Positions 31,665 to 37,745 of a DNA stretch of 64,000 nt are shown piece by piece; the first letter of the stretch is position 1, and every line of letters begins with the position of its first letter. Under the pieces are notes generated by a model. The model ran no database searches and had not been told where the DNA came from. It saw only the letters and a program-made list of their open reading frames with translations. The position numbers were made by a program, and so were the translations under genes. The stretch lies in sequence record MH791414.1. The stretch is one strand, 5' to 3'.

Positions 31665-32135
31665 ATGGCTGGAAGAAGTACATACAAAGGTCAATATTTC
31701 GTTAAGAATAGAGAAAAGTATAAAGGGGACCCAAAAAAGGTCACATATCGAAGTTCTTGGGAAAAATATATAATGGAAATGCTTGATAATAGTCCAGATG
31801 TTCGATATTGGAATAGTGAAGAGATGGTTATCCCATATTTTTCAAATGCGGACGGAAAGAAAAGGCGTTATTTCATGGATTTCTATATACAATGGGTGGA
31901 TGGTAGTATTTCCCTATGGGAAGTAAAGCCACAGAAAGAAACAATTCCGCCGGTTGCACCTAAAAGAAACACACTCAAGTCAAAACAGACTTTTATGGAA
32001 CAAGTATATACATGGAACGTAAATACAGACAAATGGAAAACCACCGCAGAAATCTGTAAGAAAAAAGGGTGGCGATTTAATATAATTACCGAATCCGCAT
32101 TAAAAATGATGGGATTTAAAGGACTGAACAAATGA
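31665..32135 (+). CDS. 4: Head completion protein gp4
   Basis: KYKGDPKKVTYRSSWE and IPYFSNADGKKRRYFMDF match T4 gp4. Confidence 0.93.
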   Translation: MAGRSTYKGQYFVKNREKYKGDPKKVTYRSSWEKYIMEMLDNSPDVRYWNSEEMVIPYFSNADGKKRRYFMDFYIQWVDGSISLWEVKPQKETIPPVAPKRNTLKSKQTFMEQVYTWNVNTDKWKTTAEICKKKGWRFNIITESALKMMGFKGLNK

Positions 32136-33130
32136 TATTTGAAATCAATGAACGTGCTGAAACTACGGCAGAAAAAAGACAAAGGCGAGATTGGATAGAG
32201 ATCGGCGCAAAGTTCATGGATGCTAGAAAAAAAGCACCTACCATGACAGCAAAAAAATTTGCAGAAGAAAATGGACTTAATTATGAAACGTTCAGTCGGG
32301 CAATGCGTCGTTTTAGAGATGATATTAAAAAATATTATTCTCTTACGAACCCGAACAAGAACAAACAGCAATGGATTGAGCTTGGTGTAGACTATTTAAC
32401 AAAAAAAGAAAAAACTAATATATCCCAAGCTGAATATATAAAAGCAACTGGCTTGAACCAAGAAACTGCTTCTAGAGCTTTCCGAAGATTCAAGAGTGAT
32501 ATCATTCTCGCAAAAAAATTAAAAGATGCGAAAGAAACCGGAAGACGACTAACAAACAACGAGAAATACCAGTTGATGTTACAGGATTTCCGAACTAAAG
32601 TTCGTCAATATGAGAAAGAACCACAAAAATCAGAGAGAAAGTCTATTGACTGGTTCAACACTTTTATTAAAAAGAACGTGAGAGGACATAGGGTTTCAAA
32701 ACCACAGCCGGGAAGGTTGTATACTTTTGCGTATGACGCAAAACATAAAGCAACTCTACCATATTGGGATAAATTCCCACTTATTGTATATCTCGGGTTG
32801 AGTACAAAACACAGAGGTTTGATGTTGGGCTTAAACCTTCATTATATTCCAGTGAAAGCCCGCAAAGAATTTATGGAAGAACTTTTAAAACACGCAACTA
32901 CAGAACGTATAACCAATAGAACAACCCTAAATATAAATTGGGAGAAGGTCAAAGGTATGAGAGGGGCAGATCACATGATCAAAGCGTATTTGCCTAATCA
33001 TGTTAAAGGTCCATTTATGGAAATAAAACCGCAAGATTGGAGTTCTGTTATCAATCTTCCGACTCAGCGTTTTGTTTCTGGTATGCCTCCTAAGACCTAC
33101 AATACTAACAAGGTTTGGAGTTCATATTAA
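32132..33130 (+). CDS. 2: DNA end protector gp2
   Basis: KPQPGRLYTFAYDAKHKATLPYWDKFPLI and LGLNLHYIP match T4 gp2. Confidence 0.95.
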   Translation: MIFEINERAETTAEKRQRRDWIEIGAKFMDARKKAPTMTAKKFAEENGLNYETFSRAMRRFRDDIKKYYSLTNPNKNKQQWIELGVDYLTKKEKTNISQAEYIKATGLNQETASRAFRRFKSDIILAKKLKDAKETGRRLTNNEKYQLMLQDFRTKVRQYEKEPQKSERKSIDWFNTFIKKNVRGHRVSKPQPGRLYTFAYDAKHKATLPYWDKFPLIVYLGLSTKHRGLMLGLNLHYIPVKARKEFMEELLKHATTERITNRTTLNINWEKVKGMRGADHMIKAYLPNHVKGPFMEIKPQDWSSVINLPTQRFVSGMPPKTYNTNKVWSSY

Positions 33131-34068
33131 TGTCACTAATACCACCAATTCCAAGTATAGATTCCCTAGTGGATGGGGCTCTTACTTTCGGAGAAGGAAT
33201 CTTAAACGAAGGGGATGCAAGTGAGATCCCCGATTTAACCAGATTTATGCGGAAAGTAGAAAACACCGATTTGGCAAGACCTAATATGTTCATTGTCCGA
33301 TTTGGTGATTTCCGAACCACAATTTTTAGTGATGGTGTTTTCGATAGCGACTTGCCTATTTTCCCGGATGGATCGGGTGTCAGTACAAGCGATGATCTAT
33401 TTTCTGGATCTAGCTATACTTGGCATAGGATACAAGATGTTGCTTTGGGGCAAGCTCATAAAATACTCACACCAAGTATGAAAAGAATATTTGGTGCTTG
33501 GGACCCATCTTTAATACGAATTATACCGGGTGCTGGTGAAATTCTAGACGGTTTCTTAGGTTTAGATTATGATGTCAATAAAGACTTAGCTTTAATGGTT
33601 AAATCAGTTTCATTGCCATCATCAACTTTAGAAACCCAGATCAATAGAATTGATAAATTACCCAGACATGAGGTAAAAGGTAGAAACTATGGGACAATGA
33701 CCATGACGTTTTATTGCTCTCCTTCATATGAAGAACGGGCATTAATGCTAACATGGCAAAACACCATTGTAGACCCGAAAAATGGTAGGTTTGGTTTCTA
33801 CAATACTTACGCAAAAGATATAGACGTTATCACGCTTGATAGACACGGTGTAAAACAATCGACTGTACACAACGTAGGTTGTTTCCCTATTGAAGTTGGT
33901 GAAGTTCAACTTGACTTTGAGAATAATTCTCAAGTGTCTACGTTCACAGTAACCTTTGCTGTTTCTACTACTACCCATGTACCAACTAAGGGTACAGAAA
34001 CCGGTATAGATTCAATAGAGAGTATCATCAGACGTACTACAGGTGTTCTAAACGCTATTAAGAACTAA
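33130..34068 (+). CDS. 54: Baseplate tail tube initiator gp54
   Basis: DLARPNMF, LMVKSVSLP, WQNTIVDPKNG and GCFPIEVGEVQLDFENNSQVSTFTVTFA; tube-like fold; TAATG coupling to gp2. Confidence 0.8.
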   Translation: MSLIPPIPSIDSLVDGALTFGEGILNEGDASEIPDLTRFMRKVENTDLARPNMFIVRFGDFRTTIFSDGVFDSDLPIFPDGSGVSTSDDLFSGSSYTWHRIQDVALGQAHKILTPSMKRIFGAWDPSLIRIIPGAGEILDGFLGLDYDVNKDLALMVKSVSLPSSTLETQINRIDKLPRHEVKGRNYGTMTMTFYCSPSYEERALMLTWQNTIVDPKNGRFGFYNTYAKDIDVITLDRHGVKQSTVHNVGCFPIEVGEVQLDFENNSQVSTFTVTFAVSTTTHVPTKGTETGIDSIESIIRRTTGVLNAIKN

Positions 34069-34071
34069 GAT

Positions 34072-34100
34072 AAACCCGGATCTAACGATCTGGGTTTTTT
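34072..34100 (+). terminator. Intrinsic terminator
   Basis: AAACCCGGATC-taac-GATCTGGGTTTTTT. Confidence 0.8.
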
Positions 34101-34181
34101 GTTATCTAAAACACGAACGAAGTGAGTCGCCGGAGGCGGTTCGCTACGCTCACAGATTACTTTCTAATTATAGATCTTCTA

Positions 34182-34189
34182 TATAAATA
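34182..34189 (+). promoter_or_regulatory. Late promoter TATAAATA upstream of gp26
   Basis: Exact T4 late consensus; a GGTAAATA variant lies at 34299-34306. Confidence 0.6.
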
Positions 34190-34337
34190 CTTATAGAAAC
34201 TTTATAGTTTGATTGCAAGTGAAACTAATATTTTTGATTAAATTTTAACCGTATAATAGATCAATTAAGTCTCGTAGCTGGATCTGTTATACTAGGTAGG
34301 TAAATACTCTTATAATGAGATAATAAGGATTCTATAA

Positions 34338-35114
34338 ATGTCTACGATAGATAAAAATGTTCTTCTAACTGCTATGAAGAAGAATGTTCAAGAAACTAAG
34401 GTGAAGCTCTCTAATGGTAAAGAGATCCGGATCCGTGCTTTTGTAATGAAAGAAATGAAACTCCTTATGATGGCAAATGAAGCCGGTAAAGGAATTGAAG
34501 ACGCAATCATCCAGATTGTTAAAAACTGTATTCTTACAAAGGGTGTAGTTGTAGAACAACTTCCTATCTTTGATCTGGAATCGATTTATATTGCTTTGTA
34601 TCAGCTTTCTAAGGCATCTCCATACATTCCAGTTACTTTTACTTGTGCTAATGAAATTCTTGATGAGAATGGAGAAATTCAATATGACAAATACGGTAAC
34701 GTGGTTCTATGTGAGAATGAAATTAAAGTAAATTTGAATCTTAAAACCGCTAAACTCTCGGAAGCACCATCAAACGAAATCGTTTTGAACGAGAATATGA
34801 AGATTATCATGCGATATCCGAATATTAGTGAGGTTGAATATTTCAATATCGATAAAGAATCGGAACTTTTTAATCTTATAGTTCGTTGTATCGACGAGGT
34901 TCATATGGGTTCTGACATTGTTAAAGTTGGGGTTGATATACCTTATGAGGATATCGGGGAAGTAATGGAATATGCAGATGACAGCGCCATTATAAAAATG
35001 AGTAAGTTTGTTACTGGAATTCCTCAACATACCCTAAATATACCAGTAAAGTGTAAAAAATGTGGTCATGAAGAAATAGTAACGCTAACGGGAGTTGAAA
35101 GTTTTTTCGTATAA
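34338..35114 (+). CDS. 26: Baseplate hub assembly protein gp26
   Basis: IRAFVMKE.K.L, FTC...C, MRYPNI and VKCKKCGH..VTLTGVESFF match T4 gp26. Confidence 0.9.
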   Translation: MSTIDKNVLLTAMKKNVQETKVKLSNGKEIRIRAFVMKEMKLLMMANEAGKGIEDAIIQIVKNCILTKGVVVEQLPIFDLESIYIALYQLSKASPYIPVTFTCANEILDENGEIQYDKYGNVVLCENEIKVNLNLKTAKLSEAPSNEIVLNENMKIIMRYPNISEVEYFNIDKESELFNLIVRCIDEVHMGSDIVKVGVDIPYEDIGEVMEYADDSAIIKMSKFVTGIPQHTLNIPVKCKKCGHEEIVTLTGVESFFV

Positions 35115-35278
35115 CCCTCGTTAACCATACAATATTTGACCATTTCAATACAGTTTATAAATTAAGAAAAGATGGATGGTTACATTCAGATTTAGAAGAG
35201 ATGACACCTTTTGAATTTGGGGTATACGTCCAGCTTTATCTTCATGAACTTAGAGAAAAGGCAAAAGAGGGTGAATAA
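35108..35278 (+). CDS. 51: gp51-like C-terminal segment, no upstream start codon; probable -1 frameshift extension of gp26
   Basis: RITLVNHTIFDHFNTVYKLRKDGWLHSDLEEMTPFEFGVYVQLYLHELREKAKEGE resembles the T4 gp51 C-terminus; in-frame TGA at 35096; stop overlaps the gp29 ATG. Confidence 0.75.
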   Translation, partial: RITLVNHTIFDHFNTVYKLRKDGWLHSDLEEMTPFEFGVYVQLYLHELREKAKEGE

Positions 35279-37170
35279 TGATTGGCGAGGGAAAAAACAA
35301 GGTCTTAGATCCATCGATAAAAGACCTTAAAGAGTCTCTTGATATAGTCACGGATTCTATGCTTACGCTCGATGACAAAACGGAAAAGTTGACAAAATCA
35401 ACCACCGATTTGACTGCTGCTTATGATATTAATTCTGATGCTAGTGTTTCTTTATCTCAGGAACAAGAAAAACTAACTAACCAGATTAAAAGGCAGCGTA
35501 AGACAAATATCAATAGAGATAAGGTAAACTCCGATCTCGAAAAAGAGCGCATTAAAGAATTACAGACGATTCAGGATTCCAACGAAAGACGGAAGAAGCT
35601 TGAAACTATTCTTAATGATCAACAACCTTTGGTTGATTACTCTAATAATATTCCTGTTGAGGATGATTCCGGAAATAAAAAGAAGAAACCTATTCCGGAA
35701 GAAACAAGAGAGACCTTAGAAGAATTTATTAAGAGAGAAGTTGGAGATAGAGACGAATTTATCGAAAACTTTAAAAAGGAAAACCAGAAGACTGGTAAAT
35801 TTATTCGAGAAGTTGCGGCAAAAGCTAACATAATTAATCGAATGAAAAACTCCGAGACGTCAGCAACTGCCAAAATATTGGGTCATACCATGAGTGCTGG
35901 TATGGGTATGATAACTGGAACAATTGATAATTTATTATCGTCAATCCCCGGTTATCGTGAAACTGCCAATGCTACAAAATTTGTTGCCGGGTCTATCTAT
36001 GATGCACATAAAGCCAGAAAGGAAAAGAACCTTGACCGGAAAGCAGAAAAGACTTACGAAGCGAAGAAATCTGATGCAGTTTCTAAATTTCAACAAATCC
36101 CAACCCCCGGAAAATCTCCAACCGAAGAAAAAATAAAACAAGAGAGAGATTCGAGGGATAAGAAAAAGGAATCTGATGCAAATTCAAGAGAACGAGACGC
36201 AAACGATAAACGTCATAAAGGATTAATGTCTGTTCTTAAAGGACTTCAAATGTCCATGATCCTTGGTAAGCTAATGTCGTTTATAGGGCCTATAATGGCT
36301 ATTGGTGGTGGGTTGATGGCTGCTGTTACTGGTCTAAGTGGTTCAGTTGCTGGTATTGGTGCGGCGGTTGCGGCGGCTCTTGGTGCTGTAGTTGGAAAGA
36401 TGATCGGAAGTATGACCGACCTATTTAAAAAATTGCCGGGTTTTAGTGGACCTAAAACAACTCCGACAAAACCGACTATAGATCCAAAAACAAATAAACC
36501 AACCACAGAACCACCGAAGAATGGAAAACCAAATACTCCGAAACCTAGCGGTGGTCCCACTATAGAAACAAAGCCAACCAGTACCCCGAAACCGGGTGTT
36601 CCTGATGCGGCTGGTAAGGCGGGGAAAACCGCAGGTAAAGCTGGTGCAGGGAAAGTTGCCGCAGAAGCTGCATCTAAATTCCTTCGGTCAGGTGGTGCTC
36701 GTAAATTGGCTGGCTTTGCTTTAAAACTTGGCCTTAGAGCTATCCCATTCGCTGGTGCTGCGCTTTTAGCTTACGACATATACTCAGCCATTAAGGATAA
36801 CCCCGAAATGGTAGAGAAGGGTATGGAAGCCGCCAAAGGGGCTTTTGGTAATGTTGGTGAAGTATTAGGTATTTCTTCTGCTAATGCGTCGGATGAACCT
36901 GTTGATGGTAGTAAATTGAAACCTGTTATTAAGTCTGGTGAGGACCAAGCCACATCGGCTAGGATCGAGGAAGGTAATAGGAAGGTTGAACAATTTAGAG
37001 CCAAACAGGCAGAAGAAGAGAGGAAACGGGAAGAAAGAAGGACAGAAGCTATGTACGCATCATATAACACACAAACATATAACAGTATGACGTCTGTGTT
37101 GCCGTCTGGTTTTGGTCCATATCATCCAGAAACCCCTGTAGGATCCTATGGAGTTCAACCGATATCATGA
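35278..37170 (+). CDS. 29: Baseplate hub / tape measure gp29
   Basis: Long charged helical N-terminus, Gly/Ala hydrophobic segments and RAIPFAGAALLAYDIY motif; follows gp26/51. Called mostly on composition and context. Confidence 0.7.
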   Translation: MIGEGKNKVLDPSIKDLKESLDIVTDSMLTLDDKTEKLTKSTTDLTAAYDINSDASVSLSQEQEKLTNQIKRQRKTNINRDKVNSDLEKERIKELQTIQDSNERRKKLETILNDQQPLVDYSNNIPVEDDSGNKKKKPIPEETRETLEEFIKREVGDRDEFIENFKKENQKTGKFIREVAAKANIINRMKNSETSATAKILGHTMSAGMGMITGTIDNLLSSIPGYRETANATKFVAGSIYDAHKARKEKNLDRKAEKTYEAKKSDAVSKFQQIPTPGKSPTEEKIKQERDSRDKKKESDANSRERDANDKRHKGLMSVLKGLQMSMILGKLMSFIGPIMAIGGGLMAAVTGLSGSVAGIGAAVAAALGAVVGKMIGSMTDLFKKLPGFSGPKTTPTKPTIDPKTNKPTTEPPKNGKPNTPKPSGGPTIETKPTSTPKPGVPDAAGKAGKTAGKAGAGKVAAEAASKFLRSGGARKLAGFALKLGLRAIPFAGAALLAYDIYSAIKDNPEMVEKGMEAAKGAFGNVGEVLGISSANASDEPVDGSKLKPVIKSGEDQATSARIEEGNRKVEQFRAKQAEEERKREERRTEAMYASYNTQTYNSMTSVLPSGFGPYHPETPVGSYGVQPIS

Positions 37171-37745
37171 TAAGAAATCAAACGCACATCACCAATATGC
37201 GTCTGGAAATTCCAGACGCTAATACAACAATGAATTTTGTTAACGCCGCGCAATCGGTAAATATACCATCACTAGAGATGGAAATTTCTAGAGTTTCTAT
37301 AAATCAAATGGCGTCTGGTAATTTACCGGGGTCTAAGATTAACTATGAACCATTGAGAGTGAGATTTCTAATCGATGAAGATTTTAAATCGTATCAAGAG
37401 ATCTACCAGTGGATGATTTCAGTCACTGATAGCAGGACTTTTGATTCTACTGCTCATTTACCGGGTGCTAGACCTAGAACCATGTTAGTTCATATACTAG
37501 ATAACTCTAAAAGAAACATCTTGATGACCTTCAAATTTAATGACCCATTCCCCAGCACAATTGACGAAATAGAGATGAGCTATGTGGATTCTGGAAACCC
37601 AGCCATAACTGGTATGGTTTCTTTTCATTATGCTACTATGAGTCTTTTGGATAAGAATGGTAATGAAATTTTACCGCTCAAAACTAAGGTCGGTACTGGT
37701 ACAGGTTCAAACGGTGGGCTCGCTTTGCACCCATCACTAAGATAA
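37167..37745 (+). CDS. 3: Tail tube terminator gp3
   Basis: AQSVNIP, YEPLRVRFLIDEDFKSY.EIYQWM and ILDNSK match T4 gp3. Confidence 0.9.
   Translation: MIRNQTHITNMRLEIPDANTTMNFVNAAQSVNIPSLEMEISRVSINQMASGNLPGSKINYEPLRVRFLIDEDFKSYQEIYQWMISVTDSRTFDSTAHLPGARPRTMLVHILDNSKRNILMTFKFNDPFPSTIDEIEMSYVDSGNPAITGMVSFHYATMSLLDKNGNEILPLKTKVGTGTGSNGGLALHPSLR

What the first reader, a model, noticed from the sequence alone, without database searches (positions are those of the whole stretch)
35090..35280. Putative programmed -1 frameshift fusing gp26 to a gp51-like tail: a lambda gpG/gpGT-type chaperone switch in a T4-like phage
Seen: gp26 ends GAA AGT TTT TTC GTA TAA, giving a perfect X XXY YYZ heptamer T TTT TTC (35102-35108). 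The -1 frame is closed by TGA at 35096, then stays open for 56 codons to a TAA (35276-78) that overlaps the gp29 ATG. It has no ATG/GTG/TTG until codon 32. An SD-like GGGAG ends 7 nt upstream of the heptamer. Established: long-tailed phages make gpG and gpGT tail chaperones by -1 frameshift just upstream of the tape-measure gene, and upstream internal SDs stimulate bacterial -1 shifts (dnaX). From recall, T4 gp51 is a gp26-like protein whose C-terminus ([32 protein letters not shown]) aligns with this extension (IFDHFNTVYKLRKDGWLHSDLEEMTPFEFGVY). Inference: this phage makes gp26 (258 aa) and gp26-51 (~313 aa) from one locus, T4 fixed the two products as separate genes, and gp26/gp51 are G/GT-equivalent chaperones for gp29.
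Basis: partly seen in the sequence, partly recalled or inferred. Interest (0 to 1): 0.9.

Follow-up and report, generated by a model that had tools for sequence, protein, structure and literature searches.

The report
Frameshift-made tail chaperone pair, already described
This T4-like Aeromonas phage almost certainly makes a short and a long tail-assembly chaperone from one gene by slipping back one base on a run of six T's, a real and very conserved feature, but one whose kind was published for T4-like phages in 2022.

Summary
The window is Aeromonas phage Aswh_1 (MH791414.1). Its gp26 gene (34338-35114) ends with T TTT TTC (35102-35108). The -1 frame is open from there to TAA 35276-78, which overlaps the ATG of the next gene, and it has no ATG/GTG/TTG for its first 31 codons.

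The heptamer alone is not unusual (35 copies in the window, 36.5 expected). Comparison makes the case. All 97 distinct gp26 3' ends surveyed, from Aeromonas, Vibrio and Cronobacter phages to about 80 cyanophage-type contigs, carry T TTT TT(C/T) in the same phase, kept at synonymous sites. Nearly all have a stop one codon later, and the -1 peptide is conserved from the slip site on (FFR...). An SD-like element lies 6-9 nt upstream.

The extension matches the C-terminal tail of T4 gp51 (residues 200-245). Five T4-type phages with a separate full-length gp51 all lack the T run.

Best reading: -1 ribosomal frameshift giving gp26 (258 aa) and a 313-aa product colinear with gp51, a G/GT-type chaperone pair.

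Prior art exists: Vladimirov, Gautam and Davidson, Virology 2022, which I could not read and know only through papers citing it. This is a new, unannotated member of a known kind.

The parts
34338..35114 (+). gp26 gene, the short chaperone form (TAC-N): 258 aa, zero frame, stop TAA 35112-35114
   Evidence: ORF list and translation. PF12322 T4_baseplate E 8e-52 over residues 20-257. phrog_150 baseplate hub E 2e-55. Annotated 'baseplate hub subunit' ASwh1_256 in MH791414.1.
35090..35094 (+). Shine-Dalgarno-like GGGAG inside gp26, 7 nt upstream of the slip site; candidate stimulator
   Evidence: Sequence. Predicted duplex with the anti-SD is -6.2 to -6.9 kcal/mol at offsets 4-7. An equivalent element sits 6-9 nt upstream in 63-77% of 97 loci against 1.8% in the gene bodies. 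Synonymous bias: GAG 61 to GAA 11 at that codon against 31% GAG elsewhere, and GGG 28% against 6.5%.
35096..35098 (+). TGA that closes the -1 frame just upstream of the slip site
   Evidence: In 10 of 97 relatives the -1 stop lies directly against the heptamer, and in 48 of 97 within 4 codons.
35102..35108 (+). Slippery heptamer T TTT TTC in X XXY YYZ phase
   Evidence: Conserved as T TTT TT(C/T) in 97 of 97 distinct loci. The third base of the preceding codon is T in 97 of 97 across five codon types (66% elsewhere). The first Phe codon is TTT in 97 of 97 (73% elsewhere). The second is TTC in 93 of 97 (27% elsewhere).
35108..35278 (+). -1 frame extension, Gp51_C-like: 56 codons plus TAA, with no own start for 31 codons; unannotated in GenBank
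   Evidence: Translation. phrog_634 'baseplate hub assembly catalyst' E 1.2e-9, profile positions 58-111. Profile of 42 extensions against T4 gp51 residues 200-245, E 5.5e-6. Differences from CC2 by codon position are 6/5/31, and 3/2/16 in the start-less 31 codons with 28 of 31 residues identical. Relatives carry Pfam PF28602 Gp51_C.
35278..37170 (+). 630-aa gene whose ATG overlaps the stop of the extension; putative tape measure protein (inferred)
   Evidence: Position between gp26/extension and the gp3-like gene. Best PDB sequence hit is 'Tape measure' 8vjh_Q at E 0.0015. The positional equivalents in K566 and Syn1 hit tape-measure PHROGs weakly. No homology to T4 gp29 by hhalign.
33115..34068 (+). 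gp54-like tube initiator gene upstream (context)
   Evidence: phrog_45 tail tube E 1.7e-45. Annotated gp54.
37167..37745 (+). gp3-like tail completion gene downstream (context)
   Evidence: phrog_45 E 1.7e-36. Annotated 'tail completion and sheath stabilizer'.

Best explanation
A small share of ribosomes translating gp26 slip back one base on U UUU UUC (35102-35108), with both Phe-tRNAs re-pairing. They are probably helped by the SD-like GGGAG 7 nt upstream and by the zero-frame stop one codon ahead. Ribosomes that do not slip terminate at 35112-35114 and make gp26 (258 aa). Ribosomes that slip read 56 more codons in the -1 frame to TAA 35276-78 and make a 313-aa protein colinear with T4 gp51: the gp26-type domain followed by the Gp51_C tail. 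The two products are the short and long forms of a tail assembly chaperone, equivalent to lambda gpG and gpGT, and they act on the product of the next gene, the putative tape measure, during hub and tube assembly. Shown: the sequence features, their conservation, and the homology of the extension to the gp51 tail. Inferred: that slippage happens, that it is ribosomal, its efficiency, and the chaperone role.
For: Conservation of the slip site: the heptamer is present in phase in 97 of 97 distinct loci spanning Straboviridae and Kyanoviridae-type phages, held at synonymous sites against codon usage. The zero-frame stop lies exactly one codon later in 94 of 97.

Coding signal in the -1 frame: it reads F, F, then R in 92 of 97 directly at the slip site. 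A -1 stop abuts the heptamer in 10 loci. In Emmerichvirinae the first start is at codon 33 of 58, yet the start-less part shows 3/2/16 differences by codon position.

Stimulator: an SD-like element is enriched 6-9 nt upstream with synonymous bias.

Homology of the extension: phrog_634 and T4 gp51 residues 200-245 by hhalign, E 5.5e-6, with no match to T4 gp26. In T4 gp51 the PF12322 domain ends at residue 201.

C-terminus position: the 150 best of 1851 representative gp26 homologues all end within 8 residues of the same point.

Natural control: 5 of 5 two-gene phages encode the same FF with TTC first and no T run longer than 3.

Literature: gp26 and gp51 are listed as hub assembly chaperones absent from virions (PMC3004832). 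Poly-T slip signals in TAC-N genes of T4-like phages are cited to Vladimirov et al. 2022 (PMC12846349).
Against: There is no protein, ribosome-profiling or RNA evidence. No conserved downstream RNA structure was found, so the stimulators are inferred from an SD-like motif that also encodes conserved Glu-Gly. 59 of 97 loci, mostly cyanophage-type, have an ATG at -1 codons 4-8, so independent initiation is possible there. [quoted passage not shown] The tape-measure identity of the next gene is weak. Fold similarity to a solved tail assembly chaperone is not significant (E 0.2, TM 0.4).
Confidence: 0.72

Rival explanations
1. Transcriptional slippage: RNA polymerase adds one U while copying the T run, so a minority of mRNAs carry gp26 and the extension in one frame. 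The protein products would be the same.
For: The conserved element is a homopolymer run of 6 T in 93 loci and 7-8 T in 4. No downstream RNA structure was found. [quoted passage not shown]
Against: By established knowledge, bacterial RNA polymerase slips appreciably only on runs of about 8-9 or more, and here 93 of 97 have six. Selection has not lengthened the run. The run is held in strict X XXY YYZ phase, followed by a stop one codon later. An SD-like element at the spacing that stimulates ribosomal -1 shifts is enriched with synonymous bias, and polymerase slippage has no use for that.
Confidence: 0.12
2. The extension is a separate small gene (a short 'gp51') translated on its own, by an unconventional start or by re-initiation after the gp26 stop, and it works without being joined to gp26.
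For: GenBank and RefSeq annotate short 'gp51 / baseplate hub assembly catalyst' ORFs in phiAS5, PX29, K566, Syn1 and Melnitz. 59 of 97 loci have an ATG at -1 codons 4-8, and K566 has ATG overlapping the stop. At least 8000 such short proteins are called in public data.
Against: In this phage and its subfamily there is no ATG/GTG/TTG for 31 codons, although those codons are as constrained as gp26 itself. Conservation starts at the slip site (FFR), upstream of every candidate start. The annotated starts differ from phage to phage. The synonymous-site conservation of the T run, and its loss in two-gene phages, would be unexplained. In T4 the same tail is covalently attached to a gp26-type domain.
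Confidence: 0.08
3. Artefact: a single-base error in the T run of the assembly splits what is really one in-frame gene, or the -1 ORF is a chance open frame.
For: Homopolymer runs are error-prone. Two long-read, Pilon-polished contigs do show spurious in-frame joins and a gp26 called in several pieces.
Against: The same six-T run, the same frame relation and the same stop one codon later recur in 97 independent distinct sequences, including 21 Aeromonas phage isolates. The 150 best representative gp26 proteins all end at the same point. Substitutions by codon position (6/5/31) show real coding in the -1 frame.
Confidence: 0.02

Closest known systems
T4 gp26 and gp51, the tail assembly chaperones of T4-like phages (Vladimirov, Gautam and Davidson, Virology 2022;566:9-15; known to me only through citing papers)
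   Same: Same protein families. The window's gp26 and both T4 proteins match PF12322. The extension matches the gp51 tail, residues 200-245. The roles are the same short and long forms.
   Different: T4 and four other Tevenvirinae-type phages encode the long form as a separate, divergently placed full-length gene. Their gp26 has no T run and is followed by gene 25. Here there is one locus with a slip site directly upstream of the putative tape measure gene.
Lambda gpG / gpGT and the conserved tail-gene frameshift of long-tailed phages (Levin 1993; Xu, Hendrix and Duda 2004; summarised in PMC5009743)
   Same: Two overlapping ORFs just upstream of the tape measure gene, a -1 shift on a heptamer near the end of the first, and a short -1 extension without its own start. 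In lambda and T4 the products are absent from virions.
   Different: No detectable sequence homology. gp26 is about twice the size of gpG and has a C-terminal zinc-ribbon-like CxxC region. Fold similarity to a solved chaperone (HK97, 2ob9) is only the top-ranked hit and not significant. The product ratio is unknown here.
TAC-N / TAC-NC frameshift of Vandenendeviridae and Andersonviridae myoviruses (PMC12846349)
   Same: The downstream piece is routinely mis-annotated as a hypothetical gene. There is a T-rich slip motif at the 3' end of the short form and an uninterrupted -1 frame in all relatives. That paper uses the same comparative argument.
   Different: Different phage families and a different motif (an invariant GTTTTT there, against T TTT TTC in canonical phase here). 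Ackermannviridae Vibrio phage SD25 (L114) has the GTTTTT type in a gp26-family gene.
E. coli dnaX -1 frameshift (established knowledge)
   Same: A heptamer with an internal SD-like stimulator a few nucleotides upstream.
   Different: dnaX also relies on a downstream hairpin, and none is conserved here. In dnaX the shifted frame ends almost at once, whereas here it adds a 56-residue domain.

Membership tests
gp26/gp51 family (Pfam PF12322 T4_baseplate; phrog_150) | Significant match of the zero-frame protein to the family profile over its full length | tested here: met
   PF12322 E 8.2e-52, residues 20-257 against profile 4-218 of 219. phrog_150 E 2e-55.
Gp51_C (Pfam PF28602; phrog_634 'baseplate hub assembly catalyst') | The -1 frame peptide is homologous to the C-terminal tail of T4 gp51 | tested here: met
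   phrog_634 E 1.2e-9 at profile positions 58-111. T4 gp51 matches the same profile at positions 2-103 with residues 147-246. hhalign of 42 extensions against T4 gp51 200-245 gives E 5.5e-6. PF28602 itself could not be scanned: the local Pfam copy gave no such hit even for T4 gp51. It is recorded for at least 8000 relatives of the extension.
Frameshift-made tail assembly chaperone pair (lambda G/GT type) | [quoted passage not shown] | tested here: met
   T TTT TTC at 35102-35108. Present in 97 of 97 distinct loci, in phase, held at synonymous sites.
Frameshift-made tail assembly chaperone pair (lambda G/GT type) | Second ORF in the -1 frame, without its own start, conserved as coding | tested here: met
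   No ATG/GTG/TTG for 31 codons. Differences by codon position are 3/2/16 in that part. Many cyanophage-type relatives do have an ATG at codons 4-8.
Frameshift-made tail assembly chaperone pair (lambda G/GT type) | Located directly upstream of the tape measure gene | tested here: inconclusive
   The extension's stop overlaps the ATG of a 630-aa gene. That gene is a tape-measure candidate by position, by size and by a weak PDB hit (8vjh_Q, E 0.0015), but it shows no homology to T4 gp29.
Frameshift-made tail assembly chaperone pair (lambda G/GT type) | Tail assembly chaperone fold of the short form | tested here: inconclusive
   AlphaFold models have pLDDT 84.9 (full length) and 76.3 (residues 1-112). 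HK97 tail assembly chaperone 2ob9 is the top PDB hit for the N-terminal domain, but at E 0.2, probability 0.66 and TM 0.39-0.41.
Frameshift-made tail assembly chaperone pair (lambda G/GT type) | Both a short and a long protein are made, the long one in a small fixed share; both are needed for tail assembly and absent from virions | not testable with these tools
   No expression or proteome data are at hand. For T4, gp51 is reported as required but absent from the particle (PMC3004832).
dnaX-type stimulated -1 frameshift | Upstream SD-like stimulator | tested here: met
   GGGAG lies 7 nt upstream. Enriched 6-9 nt upstream in 63-77% of loci against 1.8% background, with synonymous bias.
dnaX-type stimulated -1 frameshift | Conserved downstream stem-loop or pseudoknot | tested here: not met
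   Window fold z-scores are 0.35 and -0.21. Anchored RNAalifold on 95 sequences predicts no consensus structure.
Programmed transcriptional slippage site | Homopolymer run long enough for polymerase slippage (about 8-9 or more in bacteria, by established knowledge) | tested here: not met
   Run length is 6 in 93 loci, 7 in 3 and 8 in 1.

The most novel reading that the evidence does not exclude
The recoding is not ribosomal. The phage-modified host RNA polymerase would slip on a run of only six T's, conserved from cyanophages to Aeromonas phages. That would be an unusually short programmed transcriptional slippage site and a mechanism distinct from the classical tail-chaperone frameshift. The title of the 2022 paper leaves room for such a reading, and my data disfavour it but cannot exclude it.
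Probability: 0.1. Interest if true: 0.6.

Novelty: new member of a known kind. Interest (0 to 1): 0.3.

Why it matters
It closes an annotation gap. In this phage and its relatives the 165 bases between gp26 and the next gene are left empty or given arbitrary short ORFs. At least 8000 short 'proteins' in public databases are fragments of the long chaperone form.

It also shows how deep the arrangement goes. One locus with a T-run slip site is found from Aeromonas, Vibrio and Cronobacter phages to marine cyanophage-type myoviruses. T4 and its close relatives are the exception, with two genes.

The synonymous-site statistics, the SD-like stimulator and the five-genus natural control give a clean comparative case that the long form is made by recoding. 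They also fit the old description of T4 gp51 as a protein needed only in 'catalytic' amounts. None of this overturns current understanding.

Tried and rejected
1. Pairwise BLASTP of T4 gp51 against the window's gp26 and against the extension showed nothing. Profiles were needed.
2. A search for a conserved RNA structure around or after the slip site found none.
3. The 630-aa protein against T4 gp29 gave no homology by BLASTP or hhalign. NCBIfam had nothing useful.
4. The gp26 family profile has no relative among solved structures by sequence.
5. The word-indexed protein search with the extension alone found no candidate.
6. A family-wide alignment was too diverse to seed a locus search. The Aeromonas-type alignment added only 9 loci.
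7. Looking for natural in-frame fusions: there are none among the 26 close homologues or the 150 best representatives. Apparent fusions among short database proteins traced to error-prone long-read contigs.
8. No second gp26/gp51 paralogue was found in the window or in the phage record with its own gp26 as query.
Early ones found no report, and the 2022 paper surfaced only through a reference list.

In my reasoning I also recalled from memory a few 7-nt slip motifs of known frameshift sites, one of them from a human virus.
Full report
IDENTITY OF THE WINDOW. The region is 100% identical to Aeromonas phage Aswh_1, MH791414.1 (Straboviridae, Emmerichvirinae, Ishigurovirus). Window position equals record position minus 124000. 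The gene order around the finding is gp4, gp2, gp54-like, gp26, an unannotated gap, a 630-aa hypothetical protein, gp3-like, then dNMP kinase.

THE OBSERVATION.
- gp26 is 34338-35114 (258 aa).
- T TTT TTC lies at 35102-35108 in X XXY YYZ phase.
- The -1 frame is closed by TGA at 35096-98 and then open to TAA 35276-78, which overlaps the ATG at 35278.
- The first ATG/GTG/TTG in that frame is at 35201.
- GGGAG at 35090-94 ends 7 nt before the heptamer.

The heptamer itself is not rare: 35 copies in the window against 36.5 expected. A single sequence therefore proves nothing.

CLOSE RELATIVES. In seven further Emmerichvirinae phages the DNA is about 71% identical (65, avDM6, CC2, AP1, AS-zj, P19, Asswx_1). 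The heptamer is unchanged in all of them. The -1 frame is open and encodes an 80-84% identical peptide, while the other two frames are full of stops. The first start codon is again at -1 codon 33 of 58.

Differences between Aswh_1 and CC2 in the extension fall 6/5/31 on codon positions 1/2/3 of the -1 frame. In the 31 start-less codons they fall 3/2/16, with 28 of 31 residues identical. This is the same pattern as in gp26 itself. In 65 and avDM6 a -1 frame stop lies directly against the heptamer, so that frame can only be entered at the slip site. GenBank leaves this stretch unannotated, or in phage 65 calls a 26-aa fragment.

DISTANT RELATIVES. tblastn with the extension reaches phiAS5, Ahp1, Aeh1, PX29, Vibrio phage VmeM-32, Cronobacter S13 and Citrobacter Ci1. 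gp26-based searches add the KVP40-like Vibrio phage K566, cyanophage Syn1, Methylophilales phage Melnitz and 80 cyanophage-type IMG/VR contigs. Over 97 distinct 3' ends:
- All have T TTT TT(C/T) in phase.
- The codon before is AGT, TCT, AAT, GAT or GCT, so it always ends in T. The same amino acids use T-ending codons 66% of the time elsewhere in these genes.
- The first Phe codon is always TTT (73% elsewhere).
- The second Phe codon is TTC in 93 of 97, although TTC is the minority codon elsewhere (27%).
- The next codon starts with G in 92 of 97, so the -1 frame reads F, F, R.
- The zero-frame stop follows exactly one codon later in 94 of 97.
- Neighbouring synonymous sites (the Gly and Leu codons) are fully scrambled.
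- The 150 best of 1851 representative gp26 homologues all end at the same point, within 8 residues.

STIMULATORS. An SD-like element lies 6-9 nt upstream of the heptamer in 63-77% of loci, against 1.8% in the gene bodies. It overlaps conserved Glu-Gly codons but shows synonymous bias: GAG 61 to GAA 11 against 31% GAG elsewhere, and GGG 28% against 6.5%. No downstream structure is conserved. The window's fold z-scores are 0.35 and -0.21, and RNAalifold on 95 anchored sequences predicts nothing.

WHAT THE EXTENSION IS. It matches phrog_634, 'baseplate hub assembly catalyst' (that is, gp51), at E 1.2e-9 on profile positions 58-111. T4 was fetched by the accession that a search returned (OL964745.1). 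In T4, gp51 (249 aa) consists of the PF12322 domain shared with gp26 (residues 1-201) followed by a tail that matches phrog_634. A profile of 42 extensions aligns with T4 gp51 residues 200-245 at E 5.5e-6, and with nothing in T4 gp26. In a family alignment the Phe-Phe at the end of gp26 lines up with Val-Phe 199-200 of gp51. The predicted long product (257 + 56 = 313 aa) is therefore colinear with T4 gp51. I built no joined sequence; each frame was read and searched on its own. Public gene calls hold at least 8000 short proteins with the recent Pfam family PF28602, Gp51_C.

NATURAL CONTROL. T4, Klebsiella phages HMGUkp2 and Roth51, Enterobacter phage KMB20 (Karamvirus) and Escherichia phage AV110 (Mosigvirus) have a full-length gp51-type gene placed divergently next to gp26. 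Their gp26 keeps the residues G-L-K-E-F-F but spells them GAR TTC TTY, with no T run longer than 3. It continues for 3-4 residues and is followed by gene 25. The slip site is thus present in 97 of 97 one-locus phages and absent in 5 of 5 two-gene phages.

MECHANISM. The best-supported mechanism is -1 ribosomal frameshifting (see Best explanation). Transcriptional slippage would give the same proteins. It is disfavoured by three things:
- the short run (six T's in 93 of 97);
- the strict codon phase;
- the SD-like element.

Independent initiation is possible in the 59 loci with an ATG at -1 codons 4-8. It cannot explain this phage, nor the conservation upstream of those ATGs, nor the behaviour of the T run. 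Assembly error is excluded by the number of independent sequences. The only 'in-frame' versions found come from Pilon-polished long-read contigs in which gp26 is called in several pieces.

FUNCTION. Leiman et al. list gp26 and gp51 as hub assembly chaperones and state that gp51 is required but absent from the particle (PMC3004832). One GenBank record already names a gp51 homologue 'tape measure protein assembly chaperone' (Abraxas).

My structural test is only suggestive. The AlphaFold model of gp26 is confident (pLDDT 84.9). HK97 tail assembly chaperone 2ob9 is the hit with the highest probability for the full model and the top hit for the N-terminal 112 residues, but at E 0.2-0.8 and TM about 0.4.

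The next gene is a tape-measure candidate by position, by size and by weak hits. It shows no homology to T4 gp29.

PRIOR ART. A reference list (PRFect preprint, PMC10274946) led to Vladimirov, Gautam and Davidson, Virology 2022;566:9-15. The library does not hold it. Two citing papers describe it. PRFect says that some T4-like phages carry one short and one longer fused chaperone gene instead of frameshifting. [quoted passage not shown] The idea as a whole is therefore published. What remains new is this unannotated instance and, possibly, the quantitative comparative detail.

VERDICT. A real, deeply conserved recoding site and an ordinary member of a known kind. Interest 0.3.

Noticed in passing
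window 35115-35277; L003 2360-2440; L009 1555-1677; L012 1504-1677: Annotation of the extension is inconsistent. It is empty in Aswh_1, CC2, AP1, AS-zj, P19, Aeh1, S13 and VmeM-32. Phage 65 has a 26-aa fragment. RefSeq gives phiAS5 and PX29 'baseplate hub assembly catalyst' ORFs of 40 and 57 aa with different starts. At least 8000 short Gp51_C proteins in public gene calls look like the same kind of fragment.
   Followed up: partly
L015 3095-3130, L111, L112, L115, L116 (gp26 3' ends of two-gene phages): In T4-type phages the 3-4 residues after Phe-Phe in gp26 (types E-L-L, K-V-I-Q, R-Y-L, K-I-M-S) resemble the first residues of the -1 extension and of the gp51 tail (K-L-L-V). T4-type gp26 might therefore descend from a fused copy that was later truncated. 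This is speculation.
   Followed up: no
L113 (Xanthomonas phage X1) 832-1781; L114 (Vibrio phage SD25, Ackermannviridae) 1171-2099: The same layout occurs outside the T4-like families. X1 has T TTT TTC and a Gp51_C-like -1 ORF. SD25 has GTTTTTC out of the canonical phase, with an ATG overlapping the gp26 stop. This resembles the GTTTTT motif reported for Vandenendeviridae and Andersonviridae.
   Followed up: partly
L109 1399-2300; L110 2001-2282: In one Pilon-polished long-read metagenome contig (L109) gp26 is called in four pieces. Both L109 and L110 yield database 'proteins' that join the gp26 end and the extension in one frame. These are assembly errors in or near the T run, not natural fusions.
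   Followed up: yes
window 32132-33130: The gp2 (DNA end protector) homologue is 332 aa. It carries an extra N-terminal helix-turn-helix part (phrog_32288 E 6e-23, residues 1-68) in front of the gp2 domain (residues 134-332). K566 gp2 is only about 198 aa.
   Followed up: no
L004 (Aeromonas phage AP1) 2640-4354: The gene after the extension is annotated as three consecutive CDS in AP1, whereas relatives have one long gene. Either the gene is broken twice or the sequence has errors.
   Followed up: no
window 34072-34337: A terminator-like hairpin (11 pairs plus a T tail) sits right after gp54, followed by about 240 nt of non-coding sequence before gp26. gp26 may therefore start its own transcription unit.
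   Followed up: no
L003 1587-2273 versus L005 1489-2268: gp26 of phage 65 is annotated as 228 aa, while the nearly identical avDM6 gene is 259 aa. The start in the phage 65 record is probably called too far downstream.
   Followed up: no
(BFVD matches to the gp26 model): gp26-fold proteins turn up in many non-T4 myoviruses (Bacillus SP-15, Pseudomonas PaBG, Ralstonia RP12, Achromobacter Motura, Campylobacter CP220). Some sit inside proteins of 430-550 aa.
   Followed up: no
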